Sequence record: PQ330092.1
Reading direction: 5' to 3' (one strand)
DNA: 64,000 nt
Shown: piece after piece, positions 8,237 to 25,900 of the stretch
How positions within the stretch are numbered: position 1 is the first letter of the stretch
Layout: every line of letters starts with the position of its first letter
Notes under the pieces: generated by a model
What the model was told of the DNA's origin: nothing
What the model saw: only the letters and a program-made list of their open reading frames with translations
Database searches by the model: none
Translations under genes and position numbers: made by a program

Positions 8237-8465
8237 GCACCCGGTGGGCTTGAGTCTTTCTCGACTTGATGGAACTATTATACAGTACTGGAAAAATAAA
8301 GCAATACCCTGGATGAAAAAAGTTTTAATTAATTTGCTTGCCATCCTGGGCCGGACTATGGTACTATATTTCAGTACTGAGAAAGTGCGTTTACCTGCTA
8401 GGGTGCGGGAGTGTATCCTTTTTTTATATCTTGAATTTTGGGCGTAATTCCGCACCCTCTGGGGT
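8237..8465. promoter_or_regulatory. three CCC-Ann-GGGTGC elements with minus-strand promoters
   Basis: Motifs at 8237-8250(-), 8393-8406(+, degenerate) and 8452-8465(-). Minus-strand TTGCTT-16-TATAAT and TTGACT-16-TATAAT upstream. Confidence 0.6.
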
Positions 8466-8671
8466 TTCCGCTTTCTCGCGTCTATGTAGTAATTATACGC
8501 TTTTTCAGGATCAAGTCAATACCTAAAAACAAAATAATTGAAAATAATTTAACGCGTTTAAACGGCCTGTAAAGCCCTGGAATGATTGGAATGGTGCAAA
8601 TGTATAGCTTATGTGTATTAATGCGTTAGAATGCGTCTGAGGCCGTTTTATGGGGTGTAGTAGTGATTTGG

Positions 8672-8764
8672 TTGATTCAGTACTGAATAATAGTACTCCT
8701 ATATAGAAAGATAGTTCCCCTGGATTGATTCAGTACTGAATAATAGTACTCCTATATAGAAAGA
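8672..8764 (+). repeat. 40-bp exact direct repeat (8672-8711, 8725-8764)
   Basis: TTGATTCAGTACTGAATAATAGTACTCCTATATAGAAAGA x2. Confidence 0.9.
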
Positions 8765-8795
8765 AAACTATTTTAAAAGTATTTGTAGAAAGTAC

Positions 8796-8856
8796 TTGCA
8801 CCGTACTGATAAAAGCGTATAATGTTTTACATCGAGAGCGGGAACACTTCCCGCTA
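8796..8856 (+). promoter_or_regulatory. prototype promoter/stem-loop cassette head (~45 promoters per DTR, many with the hairpin)
   Basis: AAAGTAC-TTGCAC-16-TATAAT-GTTTTAC-ATCGAGA-GCGGGAA-cac-TTCCCGC. Variants at 9256, 9936, 11299, 11554, 13622, 13959, 15544, 15774, 16360, 16795, 19524, 21105, 23650, 23955, 24503, 24839, 25479, 26347 and others (approximate positions). Confidence 0.9.
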
Positions 8857-8878
8857 CACATTAAGAGAGATTAAAACG

Positions 8879-9241
8879 ATGGCGACTCAAATCAATAAAA
8901 TCATGCTTAACCTGGTAAACTTCCGCGAAGAGATGAAAGGTCTTCCGGCTGAAACTGTAAAAATTCACATTGCAGCTTATCGGGAACTTATTGCAATGTT
9001 GCCGCTTAAGCGTGAACAATACGCCGCTACTTTGATGCTTGATTCAATGATCCATATAATGATCTCAAATGATTTAACGATGGTTTATCAGTACATGGGC
9101 GAAAATTTCGCGGTGTGTAGTAAGCCAGTACCAGGGATGGCAACTACTGAGGAATTGCACGGTTTAAATTTAAAGCAAGATGCATGGGATAATATGCCTC
9201 GTTTCCTGGTATGGGCTGACAGTGGCAAAATTTACAAATAA
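8879..9241 (+). CDS. hypothetical early protein
   Basis: Own promoter/hairpin; MATQINK start. Confidence 0.8.
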   Translation: MATQINKIMLNLVNFREEMKGLPAETVKIHIAAYRELIAMLPLKREQYAATLMLDSMIHIMISNDLTMVYQYMGENFAVCSKPVPGMATTEELHGLNLKQDAWDNMPRFLVWADSGKIYK

Positions 9242-9333
9242 GTTTAATAAAGTACTTGCAAACTAAGTTTAAAAGCGTATAATGTTTTACATCAGGTGGG
9301 GAATAGTTCCCCACTATATAAGAGGATTAAAAA

Positions 9334-9573
9334 ATGGCTAAATCAAAAATGTTCTTAGGTCACAAAAACAAAACTCATTGGAATGTAAGCCTTTGGATTA
9401 ATAACGATGAATCATTATACCGGTTGGCCCAGGACTTTATTAACGATAGCACTAATCGCAATGATGCGGCCCGTCATATGATGTTATTTTTAGAACAGAC
9501 TGGACAAGATAAAACACCGGACGGATTCAAATATAGCACTACTGCGATCCGTGCGGCGATGGTTGGAATGTAA
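9334..9573 (+). CDS. conserved phage hypothetical (WNVSLWINNDE...TPDG type)
   Basis: Own promoter, SD GAGGA; motif recalled from phage hypothetical proteins. Confidence 0.8.
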   Translation: MAKSKMFLGHKNKTHWNVSLWINNDESLYRLAQDFINDSTNRNDAARHMMLFLEQTGQDKTPDGFKYSTTAIRAAMVGM

Positions 9574-9661
9574 TAGAATAGAATTTATTTAAAGTACTAT
9601 TGCACGCTGATAGTACTTTATAATAGTGTTTTATTCATACACCAACGATAAGGGCAACAGC

Positions 9662-9928
9662 ATGAATATTAAGTATTTTGCGACGCGTGAACAAGCTCGG
9701 ATCGCCGCACGCCAGGACGGGGCAACGTTTAAAGATATGGGCGTACAATCGGAACGTGGTAAACGTTGGGCCATTGTAAAGCGTAGTACCGCCAGATCAT
9801 TACAGTACTGGTTAGCGGCCTTAAAAAGTCCCGATAGTGTATCGCGTCGAGTGGTAGAAATAAAGCTCGACCGAAAGGGCAACCGCGTGACCGTGTACCG
9901 TACTAAAAAGATTGCAGTACTTGAATAA
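9662..9928 (+). CDS. hypothetical basic protein; paralogue of 21607
   Basis: ATRExAR...FKDMG...RWA...RKGNRVTVY shared. Confidence 0.8.
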   Translation: MNIKYFATREQARIAARQDGATFKDMGVQSERGKRWAIVKRSTARSLQYWLAALKSPDSVSRRVVEIKLDRKGNRVTVYRTKKIAVLE

Positions 9929-10015
9929 AAAGTACTTGCAAACTATGTTTAAAGGCGTATAATGTTTTACATCGAGAGCGGGAACTCTTCCCGCCTATAA
10001 CCTGGAGTAATAAAA

Positions 10016-10246
10016 ATGACTAATATGTATATGACTGAAGTTAAAACCGTAAAAGATACTACCACGAATAAAACTACTTACTTACAGCGGATCTGTGGTG
10101 TATGGCAACGTATCAGCAAATCAAAGTACTTTAAATTAACATCATATGCCAATCGTTCGGATTCATTCAGTACTGAAATAAAAGGTAATAAAGTACACCA
10201 ATACGGCACTTATTATTATTATAGCCTGGACGCGATTGTAGTATAA
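10016..10246 (+). CDS. hypothetical early protein
   Basis: Own promoter/hairpin, SD GGAG. Confidence 0.8.
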   Translation: MTNMYMTEVKTVKDTTTNKTTYLQRICGVWQRISKSKYFKLTSYANRSDSFSTEIKGNKVHQYGTYYYYSLDAIVV

Positions 10247-10278
10247 GTAGTTTACAAATCTTTACAATTGCCAGTATT

Positions 10279-10450
10279 GACTTATTTTGTCAGTACTGGC
10301 ATAATGTATTCATTGGCAGATAAGCCGTAGCCCATAGGGTGCGGAAGTGTATCTATAGAAAAAGTAGTTTAGTACAGTTACAATTGTGCACCCGGTGGGT
10401 TAGCTGTTGTCATGGGGTATATTATACCAGTACTGGATAGTGCTGTCAAT
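10279..10450. promoter_or_regulatory. convergent pair of ORF-less promoter units with CCC-Ann-GGGTGC motifs
   Basis: + TTGACT-17-CATAAT leads to AGCCCATAGGGTGC (10329); minus TTGACA..TATAAT leads to AACCCACCGGGTGC (10388-10401). Confidence 0.7.
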
Positions 10451-10531
10451 ACTTTTTTTTTACTATTCAGTACTGAAAACTATTTTTAAAAAGTACTTGC
10501 AAACTATGTTTAAAGGCGTATAATGTTTTAC

Positions 10532-10606
10532 ATCAGGACGGGGAACGAAATAAGTAACTTCCCGTTAAGTAGCCCAGGAGTAAGGCACACGAAAAACTCC
10601 CCTGAT
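10532..10606 (+). ncRNA. candidate pseudoknot ncRNA, copy A
   Basis: Own promoter, no ORF. ATCAGG/CCTGAT closing stem; core TAAGTAGCCCAGGAGTAAGGCACACGAAAAACTCC. Confidence 0.7.
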
Positions 10607-10674
10607 AAAATAGTTTGACAAATGTTTTTAAAAGCGTATAATACTTACATCAACTACTGAATGAGGGTTACAAA

Positions 10675-11286
10675 ATGAAAACTATCACTACTACTACTTT
10701 CGTTATGGATTTTTCTGAATTGAACGCAGAACAAAAAACGTCAGCTATCGAACTGGTTCGGGAACGTGAAAAAAACTCAAACGACAATTATTTTTCTGAA
10801 AGTGAAATTGAATACTATAAAGAAACAGTACTACCGGAATATGGCATTAATGACGCTGAAATACAATTCAGTGGTTTTTGGTCCCAGGGTGACGGTGCAT
10901 CAATCAGTACTGACCACGTTGACGCAGTGAAGTTTTTACGCAAGGTAAGAGCATTAACTAAGTATCGCTCAATCCGTCACCTGCTGAATGAAGATGATTT
11001 GGCGATGAGTGTAAAGCGTTCGCACTCCCACTACTCGCATGAGAATACTGTAAGCGGGTACATTGAATCGGCTTACACTGATTTAACCGCAAAACAAGAA
11101 ACGTTAGTTAATGAGCTTGAGGAATTACTCACTGAAACTATTCGTGAATTGTCACGCAAGTTGTACCGTGATTTAGAGAATGCATATGAGGATCAATTCA
11201 CTACTGAAAACATTACGGCACTGATTGAGGGTAACGAGTATCAATTCAATGTTATTGATGGCGTAGTGGAATCAATCGAATATTAA
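10675..11286 (+). CDS. conserved phage hypothetical, acidic (FSGFWSQGDGAS motif)
   Basis: 203-aa ORF; own promoter TTGACA-16-TATAAT. Confidence 0.85.
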   Translation: MKTITTTTFVMDFSELNAEQKTSAIELVREREKNSNDNYFSESEIEYYKETVLPEYGINDAEIQFSGFWSQGDGASISTDHVDAVKFLRKVRALTKYRSIRHLLNEDDLAMSVKRSHSHYSHENTVSGYIESAYTDLTAKQETLVNELEELLTETIRELSRKLYRDLENAYEDQFTTENITALIEGNEYQFNVIDGVVESIEY

Positions 11287-11378
11287 TTTAAAAAGTACTT
11301 GCAAACTAAGTTTAAAAGCGTATAATACTTTATATCGAGAGCGGGAATAGTTCCCGCTACTAATGAGGAATACTACAA

Positions 11379-11543
11379 ATGAATACTTTTACCTTCGCTC
11401 AATTGAACGCCCTGGATGTATTGTCTGATGCTTTGCGGGATGCAACTGAAAGCGGTTTATTTGACAATGTTGACATTCACCCTGATGTAATTAATAATTT
11501 TTGTGATGCTATCGCAGAAGTACTGGAAGATCTAAAAAAATAA
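11379..11543 (+). CDS. hypothetical 54-aa acidic protein (below ORF-track cutoff)
   Basis: Own promoter/hairpin, SD GAGGA; MNTFTFAQLNALDVLSDAL. Confidence 0.75.
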   Translation: MNTFTFAQLNALDVLSDALRDATESGLFDNVDIHPDVINNFCDAIAEVLEDLKK

Positions 11544-11631
11544 TAGAAAGTACTTGCAATTAGTTTTTAGTACTGTATAATAGTTTACATAGAGGGGAGA
11601 AATGGTTCTCCCTGGTAATGAGGAAAATAAA

Positions 11632-11853
11632 ATGGCAAATATCACTACTCTTTCCCAACTGGAAGCACTGGTTAAATCTATGCGGGAACATGCCGACAAA
11701 ATCGGCGTACAAGATCCAGCCGTTTGCTTCTGCGACGAATTGAATGATGATACCCTGGTAATAGCAGAAGTCCAGGACGTTTCTAACTATTCCTCGCGTT
11801 ACACTGGCGGCGTAGCAAATAAAGGTGACTTCTGTTTATACCTTACAAAATAA
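11632..11853 (+). CDS. hypothetical early protein
   Basis: MANITT start after SD GAGGA. Confidence 0.8.
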   Translation: MANITTLSQLEALVKSMREHADKIGVQDPAVCFCDELNDDTLVIAEVQDVSNYSSRYTGGVANKGDFCLYLTK

Positions 11854-11919
11854 CAACGCGGGGAGATAATAACTCCCCGTTACTTTTTCAGTACTGAATC
11901 ATTTAATAGACGGATCTCG

Positions 11920-11990
11920 GCACCCGGTGGGTTAGTGACTGTTTCGTCTTGATGTAGTAATTATGCCAGTACTGGATGCACTTGTCAACA
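11920..11990 (-). promoter_or_regulatory. minus-strand ORF-less unit with AACCCACCGGGTGC
   Basis: Reverse complement TTGACA-17-CATAAT...CATCAAGACGAAACAGTCACTAACCCACCGGGTGC, near-identical to the + unit at 17893. Confidence 0.7.
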
Positions 11991-12095
11991 ACTATTTTTC
12001 AAATACTTTTTATTAAAATACTTGCTAATAGTTTTTAAACGCGTATAATGTTTTGCATAGGGGAGCGGTTCCCCTGGTAACTAAGGAATAAGAAA

Positions 12096-12332
12096 ATGCT
12101 TGAACAAATCAAATCAACGTCTGCTAATGTAACGGGAACGGTATCACACTTTATTGGTGATGAATCGCGGGGCGTTCCCTATTGTGCTGTACATGTAAAC
12201 ACTGAGGGTAACTACTGGTTTACGGTTTACGGATCATATTCATTTGGACGGCCAGGGCATCAAAAAATTCTGGATAAAGTACAGCCAACGGGTAAAAATA
12301 TCACGGCTGAAATGTTTTATAAAAAATCATAA
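12096..12332 (+). CDS. hypothetical early protein
   Basis: Own promoter/hairpin, SD AAGGA. Confidence 0.8.
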   Translation: MLEQIKSTSANVTGTVSHFIGDESRGVPYCAVHVNTEGNYWFTVYGSYSFGRPGHQKILDKVQPTGKNITAEMFYKKS

Positions 12333-12416
12333 AGTACTTGATAATAGTTTTTAGTACTGTATAATATTTTACATAGCACGGGGGAGCGGTTCCCCCTGGT
12401 AACTAAGGATAATCAA

Positions 12417-12716
12417 ATGAAAATTGCAATCATCGCCCTGGCTTTATCTGTTTCCTCTTTCGCTGTTAATGCGTCGTTAGATGTGAGTAGTGAAAAATTC
12501 ATTCAGTGCACTGTTGCGATGACCAATGAAAGTACGGGCGAGATTGTTTTAAAGGATTTAGAGATCCAGCCACAAGCATTTAAAAACGGGCCGTTCCATG
12601 AAGAAGACGAAAACGGTAGCACAACCATTTATTATGATGCAAGTACTAAGCGTGGATCGGTCACGGTTATGGATACAGAGAAAGTAACGCACACAGGAGT
12701 AATTAACTGTTTATAA
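12417..12716 (+). CDS. putative exported protein (signal peptide)
   Basis: MKIAIIALALSVSSFAVNA: basic-hydrophobic-AxA. Confidence 0.7.
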   Translation: MKIAIIALALSVSSFAVNASLDVSSEKFIQCTVAMTNESTGEIVLKDLEIQPQAFKNGPFHEEDENGSTTIYYDASTKRGSVTVMDTEKVTHTGVINCL

Positions 12717-12733
12717 TCTAGTACTGAATCACT

Positions 12734-12760
12734 AGCCCACCTTAAACAGTGGGCTTTTTT
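12734..12760 (+). terminator. rho-independent terminator
   Basis: AGCCCAC-cttaaaca-GTGGGCT-TTTTT; part of a 43-bp repeat. Confidence 0.85.
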
Positions 12761-12839
12761 GTTTTGTAGTACTGCATACTTTAAAAATAGTTTTAAAAAA
12801 GTAGTTGACATTACCACAAAAAGGCGTAGAATGTATTAC

Positions 12840-12901
12840 ATCAAGACGGGGAGCACTAAGTAGACCGCCAGTAAGTCGAACGAAAAACTGGACACGTCGA
12901 T
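12840..12901 (+). ncRNA. candidate pseudoknot RNA, copy C (leader of H-NS-like gene)
   Basis: Core TAAGTAGACCGCCAGTAAGTCGAACGAAAAACTGG with compensatory changes vs copies A/B. Confidence 0.65.
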
Positions 12902-12955
12902 AAAACTTTGATACACTAATAAACGTAAACTAAACTTTAATTGAGGATTTATAAA

Positions 12956-13438
12956 ATGGCTAATGTAAAATCATTCCTGAAAGCACTGATTTCAAACGAT
13001 ACTGTTATTGCTGCTGAATTGCTGGCTGAACTGGATAACGATACAATGAAAGCGGTACGCAACAATTTTAACATTGCGTACAGTGAAGCTAAAGAACTGC
13101 AAGCCAAAAAGGTAGCAGAACTGGAAGAACAGAAAAAAGCCCGTGAAGCAGAACTACAAGCAACAATCGAAAGTATCCAGGCGGCAGTAGTTGGATTGGA
13201 TCTGGAAGTGGTTGTAGAAATGGCACATAAAGCCCTGGCGGTTAAGTACGGTGAAGATAAGCCGGAATCTAAGCCTAAAAAATGGATTCAGGAACGCGTA
13301 GCGGTAGTACTGGACAACGGGGAAGAATATCTTATTCCGGTGCGTGGTAACTGCATTGCGGTAGTACTGGACGCTATCAAAGAAAGCGGTATGACTCGCG
13401 AGGAATGGATCGAAGCTCATCGCAAAGTTGAAGCATAA
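12956..13438 (+). CDS. H-NS-like protein (coiled coil + degenerate DNA-binding domain)
   Basis: C-terminus LDNGEEYLIPVRGNCIAVVLDAIKESGMTREEWI aligns by eye with E. coli H-NS [35 protein letters not shown]; central coiled coil. Confidence 0.55.
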   Translation: MANVKSFLKALISNDTVIAAELLAELDNDTMKAVRNNFNIAYSEAKELQAKKVAELEEQKKAREAELQATIESIQAAVVGLDLEVVVEMAHKALAVKYGEDKPESKPKKWIQERVAVVLDNGEEYLIPVRGNCIAVVLDAIKESGMTREEWIEAHRKVEA

Positions 13439-13459
13439 CAATTAAAGTACTGAATCACT

Positions 13460-13486
13460 AGCCCACCTTAAACAGTGGGCTTTTTT
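13460..13486 (+). terminator. rho-independent terminator (identical to 12734)
   Basis: Same hairpin + T-run. Confidence 0.85.
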
Positions 13487-13505
13487 GTGTCTGTAGTATT
13501 CCAGT

Positions 13506-13575
13506 CCACCAGCACCGCCTAGAATCGATTCTAACGCATTAAACTGATTATCTGATACATCGCCCTAGCTGGTGG
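13506..13575. other. Chi sites 13506-13513(-) and 13568-13575(+) around 14-bp palindrome TAGAATCGATTCTA
   Basis: Seen directly; intergenic. Confidence 0.75.
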
Positions 13576-13723
13576 CGTTAAGGTCGTTAGAATGCGATTG
13601 AGAGCGTTTAAAGTATTTTGCAAAAAGTAATAAAAAGTACTTGCACGATAAAGAGATTAGCGTATAATGTTTTACATCGAGAGGGGGAAACGGTTCTCCT
13701 TCCAAATCAAAGGAATCAAAACA

Positions 13724-13951
13724 ATGGCTATTATCATTACTCGCGTATCTGGTACTACTGGCAACGAACAAGTAGTTGCAGTCATTACTAACAAGGCAGG
13801 TGCGGAATTGCAAAATGCAATGAATACCTGGGCCGTTAATGAGTTCGGTCAGTGGGCAAGTGTAGCATACATTGAAACCTATCAAGTGCCGTCGATTAGT
13901 TTAACTGATTTGGGCGTTGAGCGTATCCTTTGCCTGGATGAATTAAATTAA
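13724..13951 (+). CDS. hypothetical early protein
   Basis: MAIIITRV start after SD AAGGA. Confidence 0.8.
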   Translation: MAIIITRVSGTTGNEQVVAVITNKAGAELQNAMNTWAVNEFGQWASVAYIETYQVPSISLTDLGVERILCLDELN

Positions 13952-14036
13952 AAAAGTACTTGCAAAGTAAATCGAATAAAGTATAATACATTACATCAAG
14001 GGGAGAAATGATTCTCCCCACTACAAGGAAACTAAA

Positions 14037-14249
14037 ATGGCTATCATTACTAAAATCAAAGTTAACAAGACTATCGTTAAACTGGCAGAAGTGAAAGAAG
14101 GTTATAAAGTATCTTGGTGCGGTATGTATCGGACGTTCGCAGATATAGATGATGCGATCAATTATTACAGTGACACGGTTAAAAACTTTGTTCGTGCTGA
14201 TGTGGTTATGGCAGTGGCAACATATAAAGCAGCGAAAGAAAGTAAGTAA
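14037..14249 (+). CDS. hypothetical early protein; weak similarity to 17173
   Basis: Own promoter/hairpin. Confidence 0.8.
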   Translation: MAIITKIKVNKTIVKLAEVKEGYKVSWCGMYRTFADIDDAINYYSDTVKNFVRADVVMAVATYKAAKESK

Positions 14250-14340
14250 AAATATTATCACAGTACTATTGACATAGTTTGATAGTACTGGCATAATAGA
14301 TTTTATCAAGACGACACATATTAATTTAAGGAATACTAAA

Positions 14341-14664
14341 ATGGCTAAAACTATCATCAACACCGTTTCCCTGGCTGCAATCCATGCAATCAATGTTGAC
14401 GGTAAACGTTGGACTGATTCATATGGCAATACTTATCATTCTTGTCATGTAAGCGTTGAACTGGATAACGGCTTGAATGATCTGGCGGTTGAATCATTTA
14501 CTTATGGCTATGAGGATGCATATCAACAAACGGCGGTATCACTCTTAAAGGAATCAGTAGACGGGCTTGATACTGTTGAAACCTCCCTCTATCGTTTGTG
14601 CAATGATCTTAATATCCCGTTGCATTGTACTGTACAGGATGTAAAACGTAAAAAAGATCTTTAA
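14341..14664 (+). CDS. hypothetical; paralogue of 21188
   Basis: RWTD..GNTYHSC...FTYGY...DVKRKKD shared. Confidence 0.85.
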   Translation: MAKTIINTVSLAAIHAINVDGKRWTDSYGNTYHSCHVSVELDNGLNDLAVESFTYGYEDAYQQTAVSLLKESVDGLDTVETSLYRLCNDLNIPLHCTVQDVKRKKDL

Positions 14665-14744
14665 TTAGCTTTACTTTATGCAGATACTTTGATATAGTGT
14701 CTGCATAGGGGAAAGAAATTAAATCAACTTAAGAGGATAGTAAA

Positions 14745-15014
14745 ATGAAAAATATCAGTACTTTAATCGATGCAGGTACACATGTTCGTCGGTCTATGGT
14801 TGCAACCAGTACTACAAAACAAGTAGCAAGCGGTTATCTTGTATTTGTGCACGATGGTAAACTCCTGGAACGTTCAATCAATTTTGATGTTAAAAACAAT
14901 TGCCGTTTTATTATCTTTAAGCGTGAACAATATAAAATTGATTTGCCAGCGAAGCCCATAAGCGGGGCGTACAACGTGCAATCATTGTTTGAGCGTCAAC
15001 CATACACCTATTAA
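14745..15014 (+). CDS. hypothetical early protein
   Basis: SD GAGGA. Confidence 0.8.
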   Translation: MKNISTLIDAGTHVRRSMVATSTTKQVASGYLVFVHDGKLLERSINFDVKNNCRFIIFKREQYKIDLPAKPISGAYNVQSLFERQPYTY

Positions 15015-15065
15015 TCAAAACATCGTTAGCGGTCGATTCAGGCCGCTTATATTGGGGATTATACC

Positions 15066-15338
15066 ATGAACGTTAATCAAGTACTGAATGAGATCGAAAG
15101 CATCATAAAACCGATGAAGCGTACTGATGCTATGTTAACACCGGAAGAATGCCGCCTTTATGAGCGTTACAGCGTCGAACAAGTCCAGGCGATGGCTATG
15201 GCTACCCCAGCCGTTAAACCGCCTGAGAATGCGTTACAGGACGTTACAGGGGATTATATCATTAATCCAGTACTAGGGAAGATGGCGGCAATCACCGAAG
15301 ATCAACAAGACTACTTAAGCCAGTACTTAAAAGGTTAA
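15066..15338 (+). CDS. hypothetical early protein
   Basis: SD GGGGA. Confidence 0.75.
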   Translation: MNVNQVLNEIESIIKPMKRTDAMLTPEECRLYERYSVEQVQAMAMATPAVKPPENALQDVTGDYIINPVLGKMAAITEDQQDYLSQYLKG

Positions 15339-15343
15339 TTAAT

Positions 15344-15553
15344 ATGCTTACTGTACAGGATAAGATCGACATCTTAAAGGTTAATATGTATGTGATTGAT
15401 GCCGTACCTGGTAAAGTATTTGCATACGATGACACCACTGTAAGCGATTTCTACTATAGCCAGGACGTGGGGGATCTTTCTGTACAGTCGGTTATTGAAA
15501 ACGTAGTTAATGCAGCGTATGAGCATTTACTTTCAAATAGTACTTGCAATTAG
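15344..15553 (+). CDS. hypothetical early protein
   Basis: ORF track; SD AAGGT. Confidence 0.75.
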   Translation: MLTVQDKIDILKVNMYVIDAVPGKVFAYDDTTVSDFYYSQDVGDLSVQSVIENVVNAAYEHLLSNSTCN

Positions 15554-15622
15554 TTTTTAAACGCGTATAATGTTTTACATGAAGGGGAGAAATAGTACTC
15601 CCCACTAATTAAGGAATAGTAA

Positions 15623-16224: not shown

Positions 16225-16228
16225 ATGA

Positions 16229-16318
16229 AAAAAGTGGTTGACTTCGGTCAGCCATTTTGCTATTATATATTCATTGAGAGATAGCTCACTAGCCCACAGG
16301 GTGCAGGAGTGTATCTAT
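16229..16318 (+). promoter_or_regulatory. terminator hairpin fused to promoter, then CCC-ACA-GGGTGC unit
   Basis: AAAAGTGGTTGAC-TTCG-GTCAGCCATTTT overlaps TTGACT-17-TATTAT; motif 16291-16304 followed by TGTATCTAT. Confidence 0.75.
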
Positions 16319-17892: not shown

Positions 17893-17975
17893 ATTGACAA
17901 TATCATCCAGTACTGGCATAATACTTACATCAAGACGAGAACGTCACTAACCCATAGGGTGCACAAATGTAACTG
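17893..17975 (+). promoter_or_regulatory. ORF-less unit with AACCCATAGGGTGC (17949-17962)
   Basis: TTGACA-17-CATAAT, hairpin GACG-agaa-CGTC, motif, TGTAACTGT. Confidence 0.7.
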
Positions 17976-18899: not shown

Positions 18900-18977
18900 T
18901 ACTTGCATTTAGTTTTCAGTACTGTTATAGTACTTGCATCAAGGGGAAACATCTTCCCCTACTAAGAGGAAATAAAA

Positions 18978-19166
18978 ATGGAAAACTTATCAAGTATTTT
19001 AGTACAAGATGATTTCGGTAATCCTGGAAGTGCTATCATTGTTCGGGGTAATAAAGCAACATTTGTTATTGCTGGTGGACCTGTACAGCGTAGCATTAAA
19101 AACAATGCCGTTACTATTAATAATGTACGCTATCGCTTAGATAAAGAATTGATTCATAAACTGTAA
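18978..19166 (+). CDS. hypothetical early protein
   Basis: Own promoter/hairpin, SD GAGGA. Confidence 0.8.
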   Translation: MENLSSILVQDDFGNPGSAIIVRGNKATFVIAGGPVQRSIKNNAVTINNVRYRLDKELIHKL

Positions 19167-19193
19167 TATTAATTTAATAGAGGATAACAATAA

Positions 19194-19517
19194 ATGTACA
19201 TTCATACTACTATCACAAAGGAAGTCCGTTGCCAGTTCGAAAGTATTCCGGGCGTATGTTTCATCACTGGTACGTTTTCCCCTGGTGATCGTGATAATCC
19301 AGTACTGTTACAATTACGCCATCCATCATGGGATAAAGCATTTGATCTACCGTTGAATGAATTCGCAACTACTGCTGAAAAGTACATTAAAAATATTCGC
19401 GAGAATGATCGACTATTCATTAATGCTTTTAGTGATGCCGCGTTAAGTGAGATCCATGCTGTATTGGTTGCAATCATGGAATCAATGGAGAAAACTATAT
19501 TCAAACAAGGTGAATAA
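19194..19517 (+). CDS. hypothetical early protein
   Basis: SD GAGGA. Confidence 0.8.
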   Translation: MYIHTTITKEVRCQFESIPGVCFITGTFSPGDRDNPVLLQLRHPSWDKAFDLPLNEFATTAEKYIKNIRENDRLFINAFSDAALSEIHAVLVAIMESMEKTIFKQGE

Positions 19518-19600
19518 AAACTATTGACAATGCAATCTAGTACTGTATAATAAGTTACATGAAGGGGAGAAATGATTCTCCCCACTGAGAGGAAAGAAAA

Positions 19601-19813
19601 ATGCAAGGTCAACTAATCGTTCGTAAATGGTCTGATACTAACGAAAAACCGTGGGATGTACAATACATCGGACCGGATGGGGTATCACGTTATCAGCCTG
19701 GCGTAACGCATAGTACTGAGCAATATGCCGCCGCTCACCGCGAACGCCTGTTAGAATCCATGAAACAGGGATTCTGTGAAAAATTCATTCAAGATCATTG
19801 GCTGAAAGATTAA
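19601..19813 (+). CDS. hypothetical early protein
   Basis: Own promoter/hairpin. Confidence 0.8.
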   Translation: MQGQLIVRKWSDTNEKPWDVQYIGPDGVSRYQPGVTHSTEQYAAAHRERLLESMKQGFCEKFIQDHWLKD

Positions 19814-19830
19814 TAGAAGGAGTACAGCTT

Positions 19831-19923
19831 ATGCAAATGAATCCGATGATTATTGTTTTAGCTGTACTTATGATCATTCATGCAATTGTAGAAGTATTAA
19901 CGCAATCAGGAGTAATAAAATGA
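19831..19923 (+). CDS. 30-aa membrane peptide
   Basis: SD AAGGAG; MQMNPMIIVLAVLMIIHAIVEVL. Confidence 0.6.
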   Translation: MQMNPMIIVLAVLMIIHAIVEVLTQSGVIK

Positions 19924-20093
19924 TTCAAGTAGAATTATCAGTACTGAAAGATCTGTTTTATCGGATTGGTACTACTGGCGAATATCCGAAGGGTGATAAT
20001 GCAAAACTTTACGTATCACTCGACTTATGGCAACGCGAACAATTAGCAACGTCCTGGCGTAAAGGTAAAGCAGATAGCGAGGTGAAAGCATGA
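19920..20093 (+). CDS. hypothetical 57 aa (below cutoff)
   Basis: SD AGGAG, ATGA overlap; MIQVELSVLKDLFY. Confidence 0.7.
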   Translation: MIQVELSVLKDLFYRIGTTGEYPKGDNAKLYVSLDLWQREQLATSWRKGKADSEVKA

Positions 20094-20239
20094 AAGAATT
20101 CTTATTCGAAGTAGTGTTTCAAGGTGTCGGTAGTAACCAACTGATTCGCTCAAGTGGTTACAATGTTAACCAGGCATGGAATAACATTAAACAAATGTAC
20201 CCGAACGCTATCACCTATCGCAACCCGAAAGAAGTTTAA
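20090..20239 (+). CDS. hypothetical 49 aa (below cutoff)
   Basis: SD GAGGT, ATGA overlap; MKEFLFEVVFQG. Confidence 0.7.
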   Translation: MKEFLFEVVFQGVGSNQLIRSSGYNVNQAWNNIKQMYPNAITYRNPKEV

Positions 20240-20249
20240 AAAGAATTGA

Positions 20250-20346
20250 AAAAGGGATTGACTCCGGTCAGTCCCTTTGCTATTATATACGCATAGAAAC
20301 AAATCAGCCCACAGGGTGCATAAATGTATCTATTGTTAGCTGGTGG
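20250..20346 (+). promoter_or_regulatory. terminator-promoter fusion, CCC-ACA-GGGTGC unit (20306-20319) and Chi (20339-20346)
   Basis: AAAGGGATTGAC-TCCG-GTCAGTCCCTTT overlaps TTGACT-17-TATTAT. Confidence 0.75.
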
Positions 20347-20412
20347 CTAGTACTGAAAACTATTTTTAAAAAAGTACTTGCATTGTACTTAGAATCAAGT
20401 ATAATGTTTTAC

Positions 20413-20485: not shown

Positions 20486-20554
20486 AAAAAAGATTGACAA
20501 TAGTTTGAAGTACTGATAAAATAATCACATCAACTACTGATAAGGTAATACAAA

Positions 20555-20755
20555 ATGAAACAATTCACTTTCGGCGTAGTAGGTTTCCCAGTATCTAACG
20601 GTGTTTACAATTCAGAACGCGGTGCAAAAAATGCAGCAAGCCGGGCGTATGGTAGTCAGCGTGATCTCCAAGTAGGTTATATCAGTACTATTAGTAACAT
20701 GTTTATTCCAGTATCTCAGCGTAAAGCTGGTAGCATGAAATGGGAAACTATCTAA
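20555..20755 (+). CDS. hypothetical early protein
   Basis: Own promoter. Confidence 0.8.
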   Translation: MKQFTFGVVGFPVSNGVYNSERGAKNAASRAYGSQRDLQVGYISTISNMFIPVSQRKAGSMKWETI

Positions 20756-21606: not shown

Positions 21607-22002
21607 ATGATTACTAAATTCTACGCTACCCGTGAAGCTGCCCGTATTGTTGCACGCGAGGAAGGCGAAACATTTAAAGACATGGGCAAAGATGCACCGA
21701 AAGGTCAACGCTGGGCCGTACAGTTCAAAGAGATCTCTGATATTGTGAATTCACCGGAGCCAGTACTAACAGCAGCAGAACTAAAACGAGCGGATTTACT
21801 GGCGTCAATACTTGATGCACAAGATGAGTTTATCGCTGATTCTGATATCAAAGTACAGACAAACCATACCGCATGGACTCACGCGGATCACCTGGCAAAC
21901 CTTAAGCGTCCAAGTGAACTGATTCGCAACCAGAAAGAGATCCGACACGACCGTAAGGGTAATCGTGTAACAGTATACAGTAAACGCCGCCAGGTTATCT
22001 AA
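21607..22002 (+). CDS. hypothetical; paralogue of 9662 with a longer middle
   Basis: ATREAAR...FKDMG...DRKGNRVTVY. Confidence 0.8.
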   Translation: MITKFYATREAARIVAREEGETFKDMGKDAPKGQRWAVQFKEISDIVNSPEPVLTAAELKRADLLASILDAQDEFIADSDIKVQTNHTAWTHADHLANLKRPSELIRNQKEIRHDRKGNRVTVYSKRRQVI

Positions 22003-23519: not shown

Positions 23520-23608
23520 AAAGGGATTGACTCCGGTCAGTCCCTTTGCTATTATATATTCATTGAGAGATAACTCACTGACCCATAGGGTGCGGAAGTG
23601 TATCTATT
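23520..23608 (+). promoter_or_regulatory. terminator-promoter fusion and CCC-ATA-GGGTGC unit (23580-23593)
   Basis: Same block as 20250 and 25780. Confidence 0.75.
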
Positions 23609-23729
23609 ATATAAGTATTCAGTACTGAAAACTATTTGATAAAAAGTACTTGCATTGTACTTAGAATCAAGTATAATGTTTTATATCGAGAGGGGGAAAC
23701 GGTTCTCCCTGGCAATAAGGAATAAAATC

Positions 23730-23951
23730 ATGACTACAATGACTTGCATTTACGCTTCCAATCTTCTGAATGATGCGGCCTTTAATGTTGATTCAGAATA
23801 TCAATGTTATCGGGATGAAAATAAAAAAGTTTTTGTAGTTGATAATAATGGTTTCCATATTGAATTACAATCCGGCTTCACTGGTGTTGATGGTAAATCA
23901 GTATGGGGCGTACAGGATGATAAAGGCACATATCATTTTAAACGTAATTAA
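23730..23951 (+). CDS. hypothetical early protein
   Basis: MTTMTC after SD AAGGA. Confidence 0.8.
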   Translation: MTTMTCIYASNLLNDAAFNVDSEYQCYRDENKKVFVVDNNGFHIELQSGFTGVDGKSVWGVQDDKGTYHFKRN

Positions 23952-24035
23952 GTATTGACAAAGTATATTAGTACTGTATAATAGTTTACATCAAGGGGAG
24001 AATAGTTCTCCCCGATACTAAAAGGAAACAAAATT

Positions 24036-24308
24036 ATGTCCAGCTACTCCGCTACTATGATCATTAAAGATATGAACGGTAATCCTACTTCTGCTGGTGG
24101 ATCATTTGGAAACATTAATTTAGATGGTCGGTTATCCATGCAATCAGCCATCGATGCAGCGAAAGAAGTTTTTAAGAATGAATGTACTGTTAGTAAGCTG
24201 GATTATATGGGATTCGCTATCGAAAAAACTAATCGTTTTGTGAACTACAAAAAACCATTGATGATTGATACTAACCTGAAAGCTAACGAAGTGGAGTACT
24301 TATTATGA
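24036..24308 (+). CDS. hypothetical early protein (contains Chi 24093-24100)
   Basis: Own promoter/hairpin. Confidence 0.8.
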   Translation: MSSYSATMIIKDMNGNPTSAGGSFGNINLDGRLSMQSAIDAAKEVFKNECTVSKLDYMGFAIEKTNRFVNYKKPLMIDTNLKANEVEYLL

Positions 24309-24496
24309 CAGTTGAAGAAGTTAAAAAAGTACTGGCAGTACTACGCTATCATAATCATTGCAAGGTGAAGAATGATCCTGATTATCTCGATTCATCCCTG
24401 GAAGAGGATACACTACAAGCAATAAGCCATATGCAAAAAATGCTTAAGCGTATGACTGAAAAGAATAGACCGGACTATATCGGAAATAAAATTTAA
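24305..24496 (+). CDS. hypothetical
   Basis: SD GGAG, ATGA overlap. Confidence 0.75.
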   Translation: MTVEEVKKVLAVLRYHNHCKVKNDPDYLDSSLEEDTLQAISHMQKMLKRMTEKNRPDYIGNKI

Positions 24497-24582
24497 AAAG
24501 TACTTGCATTGTAGTTAGATTAACGTATAATGTTTTACATAGAGCGGGGGAATAGTTCTCCCGCCAGTCCAGGAGATACACC

Positions 24583-24846
24583 ATGAACACTATCGAAATC
24601 ACTATCAATGCACACGTATACGACAACGTAGTACTGCAAACTACTATGACCGCTAATGATACCAGTACTTTGCGGAATACTGTTATTAGTGCCGTATGTG
24701 CTGCAATCGGTGATGTCGCCCTGGAAAATGCAAAACACGTAAACGATGGTTTCACTATGTGCAAACGTGATAACGCAAAACATATCATCGTAGAAGGTTA
24801 CGGCGGTGTAGAATATAATGTTTATATGAAAAAAGTACTTGCATAA
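24583..24846 (+). CDS. hypothetical early protein
   Basis: Own promoter/hairpin, SD AGGAG. Confidence 0.8.
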   Translation: MNTIEITINAHVYDNVVLQTTMTANDTSTLRNTVISAVCAAIGDVALENAKHVNDGFTMCKRDNAKHIIVEGYGGVEYNVYMKKVLA

Positions 24847-24913
24847 TAACTAAAACAAAGTATAATGTTTTGCATAGGGGGAGATATCCTCCCCCACTAA
24901 AAGGAGTAATAAA

Positions 24914-25138
24914 ATGGCTAACTTTGATGAACTGATGCGGGAAGTAGCTAACCTGGCAGAAGAGAAGAAATCATTCGATTCTATCTATAACACCGCTCAC
25001 CGTGATTCAGTACTGGCATGTAACCAGGATCAAAAAGATGAACTAATCGCCACCTATCATGAAGCATGGAAGTACTACCGACAATGGGAGAAAGAAGAAA
25101 GAGAGTCTACCATTGACGGCCTCAATAATCTAATCTAA
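24914..25138 (+). CDS. hypothetical helical protein
   Basis: Own promoter/hairpin, SD AAGGAG. Confidence 0.8.
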   Translation: MANFDELMREVANLAEEKKSFDSIYNTAHRDSVLACNQDQKDELIATYHEAWKYYRQWEKEERESTIDGLNNLI

Positions 25139-25214
25139 AAGTTTTATTTCAGTACTATTGACATAGCTTGATAGTACTGATGTAATAACTTTACTAACTA
25201 CAAGGGGAAACATA

Positions 25215-25472
25215 ATGGAACAGTTCACACAATATCGGGTAAATCCTCAAGCGATGGCCTACGTAGAAGACCATAAAACGTTACCAGTACTAACACCAAT
25301 TAAAGGCCATATCTATCGTGCAATGTCGTGGTGTACGGCCCAGGATGGCTATAAAACCGTAGCCGTTGGTATGTATTGCGGTAATGGTGAATGGTTTGAT
25401 CCAAATAATCCGGTAGCCATTGACAGTACTGAAAAAATGAAATGGGCCGACTACATCGAAGATATTTCATAA
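25215..25472 (+). CDS. hypothetical early protein
   Basis: Own promoter. Confidence 0.8.
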   Translation: MEQFTQYRVNPQAMAYVEDHKTLPVLTPIKGHIYRAMSWCTAQDGYKTVAVGMYCGNGEWFDPNNPVAIDSTEKMKWADYIEDIS

Positions 25473-25561
25473 AACTATTTGACAGTACTAACCAGTAATG
25501 TATAATGTTTTACATAGAGCGGGGGAATAGTTCTCCCGCCAATAGTTTGGAGTAAAATATT

Positions 25562-25762
25562 ATGTCTATCGCTCTCGCCCTGGTTGAAGTACTGAAAGAA
25601 GCTAAAGCCAACCTTATCGATGTACAGATTAAGGAATTGCAAAACGGCTTAATCGGCTGTACTTGTACCGCTGGCGGTGCGGCAGACTATCGAGAACACG
25701 AATCACTCGAATCACTGGTTCGGTATCTTACCATGATCGTTGATGATTGGAGAATCATCTAA
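25562..25762 (+). CDS. hypothetical early protein
   Basis: Own promoter/hairpin, SD GGAG. Confidence 0.8.
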   Translation: MSIALALVEVLKEAKANLIDVQIKELQNGLIGCTCTAGGAADYREHESLESLVRYLTMIVDDWRII

Positions 25763-25779
25763 CAAAAAAGAATAAAAAA

Positions 25780-25900
25780 AGGGATTGACTCCGGTCAGTC
25801 CCTTTGCTATTATATACGCATAGACAAAAACTAGCCCACAGGGTGCATAGGTGTATCTAAAATATATAGTTAATAACGGTGAGTAACTATCTGCTGGTGG
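25780..25900 (+). promoter_or_regulatory. terminator-promoter fusion, CCC-ACA-GGGTGC unit (25833-25846) and Chi (25893-25900)
   Basis: Same block as 20250 and 23520. Confidence 0.75.

What the first reader, a model, noticed from the sequence alone, without database searches (positions are those of the whole stretch)
8237..25860. Eleven ORF-less promoter units built around RCCC-Ann-GGGTGC-N5-TGTA(T/A)CT, on both strands and in convergent pairs
Seen: motifs at 8237(-), 8393(+, degenerate), 8452(-), 10329(+), 10388(-), 11920(-), 16291(+), 17949(+), 20306(+), 23580(+) and 25833(+). Each lies ~25-40 nt downstream of its own sigma70 promoter, usually behind a tiny hairpin, with no SD or ORF. The core can form a triloop hairpin. 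The leaders of 11920(-) and 17949(+) are near-identical. The 10329/10388 and 8393/8452 pairs face each other. These include essentially all minus-strand promoters I found in the DTR. Inference: a family of short decoy RNAs, R-loop primers for multiple origins, or promoter-proximal RNAP-modifying (put-like) elements. I cannot match it to any known element.
Basis: partly seen in the sequence, partly recalled or inferred. Interest (0 to 1): 0.8.

Follow-up and report, generated by a model that had tools for sequence, protein, structure and literature searches.

The report
Repeated early RNA module, jumbo phage
The 20-kb terminal repeat of this 350-kb E. coli jumbo phage carries eleven copies of a small, previously undescribed structured RNA, each with its own very strong promoter, that is shared by all related enterobacterial jumbo phages and whose job is still unknown.

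Summary
The window comes from Escherichia phage JP4 (Asteriusvirus, Rak2-like) and holds its 20,114-bp terminal repeat twice in tandem.

Each unit is a near-consensus sigma-70 promoter followed by a 40-46 nt element at the inferred 5' end of the transcript. The element has three parts:
- H1, a 4-5 bp hairpin whose stem covaries and whose loop is purine-rich.
- H2, the invariant RCCC-AYA-GGGU.
- H3, GGGUGCR-N4-URYRYCY, which shares GGG with H2 and is about as stable.

A covariance model finds 9-13 units per genome in JP4, CBB, GAP32, RaK2 and an Erwinia phage. All lie inside the roughly 20-kb terminal repeat or its equivalent early block, on either strand.

The element gave no match in Rfam or the searched literature, no enrichment in E. 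coli K-12, only chance-level hits in bacterial genomes, and it is absent from Pseudomonas phage PA5oct.

Solitary units pointing against the genes end at a bidirectional terminator 35-45 nt later, giving RNAs of about 100 nt. Face-to-face pairs keep a fixed 45-nt gap at conserved distances from the left genome end.

My best reading (about 0.4) is a multi-copy family of immediate-early small RNAs that act by binding a conserved partner. A put-like RNA polymerase modifier and R-loop or end-related roles are not excluded. No expression data were available.

The parts
8225..8304 (-). Unit 1. Promoter TTGCTT-16-TATAAT, inferred start 8270. H1 AGUC-GAGAAA-GACU. 12-mer CCCACCGGGUGC at 8237-8248. H3 arm ACGCCC. 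Transcribed towards the left genome end.
   Evidence: (48.9 bits)
8338..8418 (+). Unit 2, degenerate. Promoter TTGCCA-18-TACTAT. The CCC arm of H2 is lost. H3 AGGGUGCG-GGAG-UGUAUCCU is followed by U7, so it looks like a constitutive terminator. Faces unit 3.
   Evidence: terminator-like 8400-8419; 20 bits, E 0.05
8440..8519 (-). Unit 3. Promoter TTGACT-16-TATAAT, inferred start 8485. H1 CGC-GAGAAA-GCG. 12-mer CCCAGAGGGUGC at 8452-8463. Convergent with unit 2, with a 45-nt gap.
   Evidence: (34.8 bits)
10277..10354 (+). Unit 4. Promoter TTGACT-17-CATAAT with extended -10, inferred start 10312. H1 UGGC-AGAUAA-GCCG. 12-mer at 10331-10342. H3 ends at 10354. Convergent with unit 5.
   Evidence: (53.8 bits)
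10376..10449 (-). Unit 5. Perfect TTGACA-17-TATAAT promoter. H1 is degenerate. 12-mer CCCACCGGGUGC at 10388-10399. H3 arm GUAACU.
   Evidence: (22.1 bits)
11908..11988 (-). Unit 6, solitary and antisense to the genes. Promoter TTGACA-17-CATAAT, inferred start 11953. 12-mer at 11920-11931. Leader near-identical to unit 8.
   Evidence: (40.6 bits)
11858..11880 (.). Bidirectional intrinsic terminator (GCGGGGAG...CUCCCCG with T-rich tails on both strands). It would end the unit 6 transcript at about 95-100 nt. It also ends the plus-strand gene 11602-11853.
16238..16316 (+). Unit 7. The -35 TTGACT lies inside a 12-bp hairpin (PeSL-like). -10 TGcTATTAT, inferred start 16273. H1 UGAG-AGAUAG-CUCA. 12-mer at 16293-16304. 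H3 ends at 16316. A second promoter (16360-16387) and gene 16439-16780 follow.
   Evidence: (59.7 bits)
17894..17974 (+). Unit 8. Promoter TTGACA-17-CATAAT, inferred start 17929. H1 GACG-AGAA-CGUC. 12-mer at 17951-17962. Followed by a GATC-rich stretch, a promoter at 18010-18037 and the DksA-like gene.
   Evidence: (36.7 bits)
20258..20331 (+). Unit 9. PeSL-like hairpin promoter, inferred start 20293. The H1 stem is lost but the A-rich AGAAACAA is kept. 12-mer at 20308-20319.
   Evidence: (37 bits)
23527..23605 (+). Unit 10. PeSL-like hairpin promoter, inferred start 23562. H1 UGAG-AGAUAA-CUCA. 12-mer at 23582-23593.
   Evidence: (67.8 bits)
25785..25858 (+). Unit 11. PeSL-like hairpin promoter, inferred start 25820. 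H1 is degenerate. 12-mer at 25835-25846.
   Evidence: (42 bits)
28339..45972 (.). Second, identical copy of the terminal repeat. It holds the same eleven units at +20114: 28339-28418(-), 28452-28532(+), 28554-28633(-), 30391-30468(+), 30490-30563(-), 32022-32102(-), 36352-36430(+), 38008-38088(+), 40372-40445(+), 43641-43719(+), 45899-45972(+). The terminator recurs at 31972-31994.
   Evidence: (0 mismatches over 20,114 bp)

Best explanation
The units are genes for a clade-specific family of immediate-early small RNAs.

Host sigma-70 RNA polymerase fires from about eleven very strong promoters per terminal repeat, 22 per packaged genome, as soon as the DNA enters. The first 40-46 nt of every transcript fold into a common module:
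- a 5'-terminal hairpin (H1) with a free-to-vary stem and a purine-rich loop;
- the invariant RCCC-AYA-GGGUGC, which can close either as a 4-bp triloop hairpin (H2) or, using the same GGG, as a 7-bp hairpin with the following URYRYCY (H3).

Both hairpins are weak (about -3 kcal/mol) and the 12-mer does not change across phages of five host genera. I therefore infer that the module works by being bound by a conserved partner, a host core protein or a phage protein, rather than by base pairing to a target. On this reading the many copies exist to supply a high dose very early, as a sponge, decoy or recruiter.

Transcripts are kept short in two ways: a bidirectional terminator after solitary antisense units, and the facing partner in convergent pairs. 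In units that point the same way as the genes, the module simply forms the 5' end of a longer RNA.

Shown: the family exists, its structure, its copy number and its restriction to the terminal repeat. Inferred: transcription start sites and RNA ends, action in trans, and the existence of a protein partner.
For: A real and conserved family:
- 105 covariance-model hits in the window plus relatives.
- All hits lie in the terminal repeat or early block of JP4, CBB, RaK2, GAP32 and pEa_SNUABM_12, with none in the remaining ~330 kb of each genome.

RNA-level structure:
- All four H1 pairs show compensatory changes in 29-43 of 92 distinct sequences. 87.6% of cells are paired, and 0 of 500 shuffles reach the observed covariation.
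- H2 shows A-U/G-U alternation, two compensatory CCU/AGG variants, and loops of 3-5 nt.
- The 3' arm of H3 varies only in ways that keep pairing with GGGUGC: 88.5% paired, against 30-58% in slid registers. In both G57-to-A variants, column 46 is U and column 74 is U.
- H2 and H3 are nearly equal in energy.

The product is the RNA, not a downstream gene:
- There is no conserved ORF.
- Units occur in both orientations relative to an all-plus-strand gene array.
- Every solitary antisense unit checked, in six phage genomes or contigs, has a terminator hairpin 35-45 nt after the module.
- Codirectional units are separated from the gene by that gene's own promoter and 5' UTR.

Not a base-pairing seed against an obvious host target, and not a host mimic:
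- The motif and its complement are at control level in MG1655, 24 against 19.
- Hits in bacterial genomes are at or below chance, with low model scores.

Precedent: a distant relative, PA5oct, makes two highly abundant non-coding RNAs from its terminal repeat (PMC7318152).
Against: - There are no expression data. Start sites are inferred from promoter geometry only, and the only RNA libraries available were assembled contigs that show neither ends nor strand.
- Codirectional units have no terminator, so there the module may act as a leader in cis.
- No partner was identified. No N-like arginine-rich protein turned up among the terminal-repeat ORFs, and PHROGs hits were uninformative.
- The exact 45-nt gap of convergent pairs, and their conserved distance from the genome end next to an 8-bp iteron array, are not explained by a simple sponge model.
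- The antisense-side terminator tails are interrupted U-tracts and may leak.
Confidence: 0.4

Rival explanations
1. Put-like or nut-like element acting in cis. The nascent 5' module binds the RNA polymerase that made it, alone or with a phage or host factor. It makes that polymerase resistant to pausing and termination, so that transcripts from the unit promoters run through the many terminators of the early region.
For: - The module starts at about +3 of the transcript, like HK022 putL (first paired base A3; PMC9378689).
- It is made of small stem-loops, and its invariant segment is conserved across hosts that share a near-identical RNA polymerase.
- The early region is full of intrinsic terminators (30 found against 13 expected).
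- Codirectional units have no terminator before the gene.
- The H1 loops (GAGAAA, GCGAAA, AGAACAA) loosely recall boxB loops. This comparison is from memory only.
Against: - About 40% of units point against all genes, and several of these are followed within 35-45 nt by a terminator.
- Every downstream gene has its own promoter, so read-through is not needed for expression.
- The module is 40-46 nt with 4-7 bp stems, whereas put is about 70 nt with two long irregular stems.
- There is no boxA, and the hairpin precedes the conserved linear segment.
- No N-like arginine-rich ORF was found, and no NusG/RfaH paralogue.
Confidence: 0.15
2. The purpose is transcription-coupled DNA transactions. The G-rich 5' RNA seeds a persistent R-loop in the A+T-rich DNA just downstream and primes replication, as at T4 oriF/oriG or with ColE1 RNA II. 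Or transcription towards the end helps terminal-repeat duplication or concatemer processing, as T7 needs transcription near its ends.
For: - Orientation independence.
- Convergent pairs keep an invariant 45-nt A+T-rich gap in JP4, CBB, GAP32 and the Erwinia phage.
- The pairs sit at conserved positions, about 1.0-1.3 kb and 3.2-3.8 kb from the left end.
- Pair 1 lies 150-300 bp from a conserved 8-bp-period repeat array (window 7955-8054; CBB 715-805), and the minus-strand units fire into that array.
- Face-to-face promoters about 100-115 bp apart have the same geometry as ColE1 RNA I/RNA II. This comparison rests on established knowledge and was not tested here.
Against: - 9-13 copies per repeat is many for origins.
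- The covarying H1 with a conserved loop, and the H2/H3 switch, are not needed for an R-loop.
- There is only one G-cluster per unit.
- Most units are not near iterons.
- No replication data exist.
Confidence: 0.12
3. Regulated leader or attenuator. A phage early protein or a host factor binds H1 plus H2 (or H3) and sets which hairpin forms. This switches the unit promoters' output on or off as infection proceeds, a temporal control of early transcription.
For: - H2 and H3 are mutually exclusive and nearly equal in energy.
- In three units H3 is followed directly by U5-U7 and would be a classical terminator: JP4 8400-8419, GAP32 17348 and CBB 15231.
- In JP4 unit 2 the competing CCC arm is lost.
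Against: - In about 95% of units H3 is followed by AUAG or AAAAUU, not a U-tract.
- Antisense and paired units have nothing to regulate downstream.
Confidence: 0.1
4. A mobile promoter cassette with a stabilising 5' end and no dedicated function. The units are PeSL-type terminator/promoter modules that spread by recombination. The leader merely protects transcripts from 5'-end-dependent decay.
For: - Four JP4 units have the -35 inside an A3G3...C3T3 hairpin, like the PeSLs of KVP40-type phages (PMC4122927).
- BLAST hits to KVP40-like Vibrio phages cover only that part, query positions 4-43.
- Contigs from related phages join one unit to another (16331 to 20349; 17926 to 20292).
- Mosaic breakpoints between relatives fall next to units.
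- H1 sits at the 5' end.
Against: - The 12-mer is invariant while H1 stems differ between copies of the same genome, so homogenisation cannot explain it.
- The same H1 variants are shared by different genera, so the paralogues are old and individually conserved.
- Seven of eleven JP4 units lack the PeSL hairpin.
- Antisense units stabilise no message.
Confidence: 0.1
5. A new small self-cleaving ribozyme or other catalytic or ligand-binding RNA.
For: Its size, a roughly 12-nt invariant core flanked by a covarying helix, alternative or overlapping pairings, and a phage context are all typical of small ribozyme classes.
Against: - No match to any Rfam ribozyme at E up to 5.
- No supported pseudoknot. 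The H1-loop to H3 complementarity exists only in the AGAUAA subclass.
- The helices are very short.
Confidence: 0.03

Closest known systems
HK022 put RNAs (putL/putR), nascent RNAs that make E. coli RNA polymerase resistant to termination
   Same: Both are promoter-proximal and begin about 3 nt into a strong early phage transcript. Both are multi-hairpin RNAs with no protein-coding role, conserved where the host polymerase is conserved (PMC9378689).
   Different: Put is about 70 nt, with two long irregular stems and a triplex, present in two copies that always sit ahead of operons. Here the module is 40-46 nt with three short hairpins, two of which compete. There are 9-13 copies, about 40% of them pointing away from genes, some followed at once by terminators. 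No sequence similarity could be assessed, because put has no Rfam model.
PeSL (promoter-early stem-loop) cassettes of T4-type phages
   Same: Both are repeated composite hairpin plus near-consensus sigma-70 promoter modules in the plastic early regions of T4-related myoviruses, and both are associated with mosaic breakpoints. The JP4 hairpin AAAGGGATTGAC...GTCAGTCCCTTT matches the A3-4G3-loop-C3T3-4 type (PMC4122927).
   Different: A PeSL is defined by the hairpin and the promoter only. The conserved transcribed module (H1, 12-mer, H3) is not part of it and is absent from the KVP40-like hits. Most units here have ordinary promoters without the hairpin.
Lambda-type nut sites (boxA + boxB)
   Same: Both combine a short hairpin, whose stem varies freely and whose loop is purine-rich and conserved, with a nearby conserved linear segment in an early leader.
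   Different: The order is reversed, with the hairpin first. There is no boxA-like sequence. The loops are 6-8 nt rather than 5. There are many copies on both strands. No N-like arginine-rich protein was found.
R-loop origins (T4 oriF/oriG) and the ColE1 RNA I/RNA II convergent pair
   Same: Both have a strong promoter followed by A+T-rich DNA. Face-to-face promoters lie about 100-115 bp apart, and each RNA carries three small stem-loops.
   Different: There is no evidence of replication initiation. Most units are not paired. The conserved RNA core has no counterpart in those origins.
ncRNA001/002 of Pseudomonas phage PA5oct
   Same: These are abundant non-coding transcripts from the long terminal repeat of a distantly related jumbo myovirus, with function unknown (PMC7318152).
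   Different: They are 236 and 451 nt, with no annotated promoter. They lack the motif: CCCNNNGGGTGC has no exact copy and is at control level in PA5oct, and the model gave no hit to ncRNA001.

Membership tests
Any Rfam 15 family | Covariance-model match at or near the gathering score | tested here: not met
   cmscan of 7000-27400 at E up to 5 gave four weak chance hits, none at a unit.
HK022 put RNA | Located at the 5' end or leader of an early transcript | tested here: met
   H1 starts at inferred +3 to +6. putL is paired from A3.
HK022 put RNA | About 70 nt with two long stem-loops forming a V | tested here: not met
   The module is 40-46 nt, with stems of 4, 4 and 7 bp, the last two mutually exclusive.
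HK022 put RNA | Placed upstream of operons whose terminators must be read through | tested here: not met
   Antisense and convergent units have no downstream genes. The downstream genes of codirectional units have their own promoters.
HK022 put RNA | Confers terminator read-through on E. coli RNA polymerase through the beta' zinc-binding domain | not testable with these tools
   This needs in vitro transcription or genetics.
Lambda-type nut site | boxA followed by a boxB hairpin with a 5-nt GNRA-like loop, plus an N-type arginine-rich protein | tested here: not met
   There is no boxA, the hairpin precedes the conserved segment, and the loops are 6-8 nt. No terminal-repeat ORF has an arginine- or lysine-rich 18-residue window of 8 or more.
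PeSL cassette | Stem-loop (terminator-like) fused to a near-consensus early sigma-70 promoter, repeated in plastic regions | tested here: inconclusive
   Met by four of eleven JP4 units (16231-16258, 20251-20278, 23520-23547, 25778-25805). The other seven have no such hairpin. The conserved transcribed module lies outside the PeSL definition.
RfaH/ops-type recruitment site | ops consensus GGCGGTAGnnTG in the leader, and a NusG paralogue to read it | tested here: not met
   The motif is CCCAYAGGGTGC, not ops. No NusG (TIGR00922) or RfaH (TIGR01955) match was found in JP4, CBB or RaK2, while the control genomes were positive.
Intrinsic terminator / classical attenuator | G+C-rich hairpin followed directly by a U-tract, with a competing upstream hairpin | tested here: not met
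   The competing hairpins are present. A U-tract follows H3 in only about 3 of 92 distinct units.
Host RNA mimic or antisense to a host RNA | The same or the complementary sequence enriched or placed in a host RNA gene | tested here: not met
   MG1655 has 24 hits at up to 1 mismatch against 19 for the reversed control. The coordinates were compared with rRNA operon positions from memory and appear to miss them. The single exact hit lies at 3,885,989-3,886,000 and was not checked against the annotation. A scan of 185,579 bacterial genomes gave 45 scattered hits at chance level, none in Enterobacterales.
R-loop replication origin | A persistent RNA-DNA hybrid that primes DNA synthesis | not testable with these tools
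   Only the geometry (promoter, G-cluster, A+T-rich stretch, iterons near pair 1) could be described.

The most novel reading that the evidence does not exclude
The module is a new class of protein-binding phage RNA. Large amounts would be made in the first minutes of infection from about 22 promoters per genome. The RNA would capture or reprogramme a core host machine conserved across Enterobacterales, with RNA polymerase itself as the prime candidate. The H2/H3 switch would be the part that is read. That would make it an RNA-only host-takeover device in T4-related jumbo phages, distinct from put and from 6S RNA.
Probability: 0.25. Interest if true: 0.85.

Novelty: new variant of a known kind. 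Interest (0 to 1): 0.62.

Why it matters
Rak2-like jumbo phages are being developed for therapy against E. coli, Klebsiella, Salmonella and plant pathogens, yet their roughly 20-kb early terminal repeat is almost entirely 'hypothetical'.

This work shows that about a tenth of that region's intergenic space is taken by one conserved, multi-copy RNA family that current annotations miss or mis-call as 30-aa proteins, terminators or stem-loops. It supplies a model that finds every copy and a concrete secondary structure with a testable switch.

If the RNA binds RNA polymerase or another core host factor, it would be a new way for a virulent phage to take over a cell. If it marks origins or end-processing sites, it would locate functions that are unknown for this whole group.

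Tried and rejected
- Rfam scan at permissive E-values: nothing at the units.
- tRNA/tmRNA scan: none.
- Full-text search for the 12-mer and its complement: only unrelated primer hits.
- The genome papers on CBB, Sharanji, JP4 and fEgEco12 do not describe the element.
- PA5oct terminal-repeat ncRNAs as homologues: no motif and no model hit.
- Host mimic or antisense target in E. coli K-12: at control level.
- Bacterial genome scan: at or below chance, and the high-GC viral contigs L015 and L024 are chance matches.
- Phage NusG/RfaH paralogue: none.
- N-like arginine-rich early protein: none obvious.
- PHROGs on the ten largest terminal-repeat proteins: only a DksA-like zinc finger and an acetyltransferase carry names.
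- Expression from public RNA libraries: only assembled contigs of related phages at low depth, which could be DNA carry-over, so no ends and no strand.
- Leaderless micro-ORF idea: only 3 of about 50 units start with AUG, the frame is not conserved, and the substitution pattern is that of a helix.
- CsrA-sponge idea: GGA appears in the H3 loop in only about 60% of units.
- H1-loop to H3 pseudoknot: complementary only in the AGAUAA subclass.
- MAFFT alignment A1 misaligned H1, so it was replaced by a gap-free seed and a model-based alignment.
- No whole genome is held for the window, so the public JP4 record was used instead.

Full report
**What the window is.**
Megablast places window 8000-20000 at 100% identity on Escherichia phage JP4 (PQ330092, 370,741 bp). 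It also matches the 121Q/PBECO4 group (Asteriusvirus) at 90-97% in patches.

The window contains an exact tandem duplication of 20,114 bp: 7148-27261 equals 27262-47375 with no mismatch. Close relatives have direct terminal repeats of 20.7-21.5 kb, shown by PhageTerm and, for fEgEco12, by restriction mapping. CBB has one of 22.5 kb. The duplicated block is therefore the terminal repeat written twice in a permuted record, and the finding covers one copy.

All annotated genes of the block are small, almost all 'hypothetical', and on the plus strand.

- The 3' half-motif occurs 18 times in the window against 1.5 expected.
- The 5' half, CCCANNGGGTGC, occurs 21 times in the whole JP4 record. Twenty are in the two repeat copies, and the reversed control gives none.
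- Every copy lies 21-28 nt after the -10 box of a strong sigma-70-type promoter, most with an extended -10.
- Three of the minus-strand units lack TGTAWCT but carry another sequence that pairs with GGGUGC.
- One plus-strand unit (8369-8426) is degenerate.

**It is a conserved family.**
The unit is found in five groups of enterobacterial jumbo phages:
- Escherichia and Salmonella Asteriusvirus-like phages
- Klebsiella RaK2 (Alcyoneusvirus)
- Cronobacter GAP32 and Pectobacterium CBB (Mimasvirus)
- Erwinia pEa_SNUABM_12 (Eneladusvirus)
- Yersinia fHe-Yen9-04 (Eneladusvirus)

.

Whole-record scans of five genomes give 9-13 units each, all inside the roughly 20-kb repeat or its equivalent block, and none in the remaining ~330 kb. 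Pseudomonas phage PA5oct, a distant relative, lacks the element. Exact-pattern scans of 2.9 million viral contigs hit only such jumbo-phage contigs plus two unrelated high-GC chance matches. A scan of 185,579 bacterial genomes gave 45 scattered single hits, at or below chance, with low model scores.

**Anatomy.**
Taking the start site as the A of the conserved CAU seven nucleotides after the -10 box (an inference), the RNA begins with H1 at +3 to +6.

*H1* is a 4-5 bp stem with a 6-8 nt purine-rich loop (AGAUAA, GAGAAA, GCGAAA, AGAACAA).
- The stem sequence differs between copies: GCC/GGC, GGAG/CUCC, ACCG/CGGU, GACG/CGUC and others.
- All four modelled pairs show changes on both sides in 29-43 of 92 distinct sequences.
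- 87.6% of cells are paired, against 24-55% when the partner is slid.
- No shuffle of 500 reaches the observed covariation.
- Because the alignment was fitted to the model, I also checked the raw leaders. 37 of 50 have a hairpin of at least 4 bp at that place, against a mean of 15 and a maximum of 23 in shuffles.
- The same H1 variants recur in different genera, so the paralogues are old.

*H2* follows after 3-5 nt. It is the invariant RCCC-AYA-GGGU, then GC.
- The R is A or G opposite an invariant U.
- The loop is 3, 4 or 5 nt.
- Two units, in CBB and the Yersinia phage, carry CCU...AGG, a compensated pair.

*H3* pairs the same GGGUGC(R) with URYRYCY downstream.
- The 3' arm varies only between bases that keep the pair: A or G opposite U, C or U opposite G.
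- 88.5% of cells are paired, against 30-58% in other registers.
- In both G-to-A variants the downstream partner is U.

H2 and H3 therefore compete for GGG. Their predicted energies are close (means -3.0 and -3.4 kcal/mol), and the minimum-energy fold picks H2 in 46 sequences and H3 in 36. The whole module ends at +38 to +46.

**Three contexts.**
1. *Codirectional units* (JP4 10331, 16293, 17951, 20308, 23582, 25835). These have no terminator downstream. They are followed by an A+T-rich stretch flanked by AGTACT, a second strong promoter, a separate hairpin-bearing 5' UTR and the gene. Four of them have their -35 inside a 12-bp A3G3...C3T3 hairpin. This is the PeSL architecture of T4-type phages, and it alone accounts for the BLAST hits to KVP40-like Vibrio phages.
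2. *Solitary units against the gene direction* (JP4 11931; CBB 10245; RaK2 10930 and 17998; Erwinia 9147; others). These run into a bidirectional terminator 35-45 nt after the module, which predicts RNAs of about 100 nt.
3. *Convergent pairs.* The two 12-mers are separated by exactly 45 nt in JP4, CBB, GAP32 and one Erwinia pair, and the inferred start sites are 102-113 bp apart. Pairs lie about 1.0-1.3 kb and 3.2-3.8 kb from the left end of the repeat in all four phages. Pair 1 sits next to a conserved array of 8-bp repeats.

**What it probably does.**
The RNA-level constraints, the fixed polarity relative to the promoter, the absence of any conserved ORF and the indifference to gene orientation all say that the RNA, or the act of making it, is the product.

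The two hairpins are weak and interchangeable, and the 12-mer is invariant across phages of five host genera. That argues for recognition by a conserved macromolecule rather than for a self-sufficient fold. The lack of enrichment of the sequence or its complement in E. coli argues against a simple antisense seed or a host mimic.

The terminators behind solitary units and the copy number lead me to favour a dosage-driven family of immediate-early small RNAs that bind a protein partner (about 0.4).

- *Put-like modification of the transcribing polymerase* (about 0.15) remains attractive for the codirectional units, because putL also starts at +3. It explains neither the antisense units nor the gene-proximal promoters. 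No NusG/RfaH paralogue or N-like protein was found.
- *R-loop or end-processing roles* (about 0.12) fit the conserved pairs near the terminus but not the rest.
- *An attenuator* (0.1), *a mere mobile promoter cassette* (0.1) and *a ribozyme* (0.03) are less likely, for the reasons given under rivals.

**Limits.**
No transcription data could be obtained. The only RNA libraries holding related sequence are kept as contigs at low depth and may contain phage DNA. Start sites, RNA ends and action in trans are inferences. E-values from the model are rough, although bit scores of 30-72 for units against 23 or less for chance matches separate cleanly.

**Novelty.**
The element is not in Rfam. It is not in the searched literature. 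Deposited records label parts of it as tiny CDSs, 'terminator' or 'stem_loop'. It is a new RNA family. Its kind, a phage early leader or small RNA, is known, but its multi-copy, bistable, terminal-repeat-restricted form is not.

Noticed in passing
window 1-47375, densest in 7148-27261: The palindrome AGTACT (often CAGTACTG) is about 20-fold over-represented. It occurs 133 times in the repeat against 6.5 expected, 42 times against 2.3 in 1-7147, and 23 times against 5.4 after the repeat. It brackets promoters (AGTACTTGACA..., ...AGTACTGGYATAAT) and follows most units by 10-25 nt. The related contig L010 has 86 copies in 12.6 kb. It may be a binding site for a factor that controls early promoters.
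   Followed up: partly
window 7148-47375 (record PQ330092 positions ~122.8-163.0 kb): The deposited JP4 genome carries the 20,114-bp terminal repeat twice in tandem in the middle of the record. The unique sequence is therefore about 350.6 kb, not 370.7 kb, and about 90 CDSs are annotated twice.
   Followed up: yes
window 7955-8054 (also 7868-7914); CBB L002:715-805: A conserved array of 8-bp-period repeats (consensus about nAGAYGGCT) lies 0.7-0.9 kb from the left end of the repeat, in an otherwise gene-poor terminal kilobase. It sits just downstream of the leftward units 8248(-) and 8463(-). It is a candidate origin or packaging/terminase site.
   Followed up: partly
window 16388-16438, 10526-10600, 20523-20560, 23660-23730: The gene-proximal promoters give a second conserved leader, ACAUC(G/A)...GGGGAAAC..CCCC hairpin, then the Shine-Dalgarno sequence and the start codon. 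This is a separate 5'-UTR family of the early genes.
   Followed up: no
window 10339-10440, 16238-16339, 23527-23628, 8235-8447, 17947-18141(-): Several 30-70 aa CDSs annotated in the JP4 record lie on top of unit promoters and modules, starting upstream of the inferred transcription start. They are probably not genes.
   Followed up: partly
window 16331/20349, 17926/20292, 17689/20304: Contigs from wastewater libraries join the sequence beside one unit to the sequence beside another, skipping 2.4-4.0 kb. This means either gene-cassette differences between related phages with breakpoints at the units, or assembly jumps across the repeats.
   Followed up: no
window 17985-18040: Four GATC sites fall within about 40 bp directly after unit 17951(+), overlapping the -35 (TTGATC) of the next promoter. 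This is a possible Dam-sensitive promoter ahead of the DksA-like gene.
   Followed up: no
window 2093-6885: A run of about 24 consecutive ORFs of 59-69 aa sits on the plus strand just before the repeat, in a stretch with strongly negative GC skew despite the plus-strand coding.
   Followed up: no
window 63037-63091: A run of 55 N (gap or masked). It was left untouched.
   Followed up: no
window 9662-9928 and 21607-22002: Two terminal-repeat proteins share a basic C-terminal motif, (D/H)RKGNRVTVY. They are possible paralogues of unknown role.
   Followed up: no
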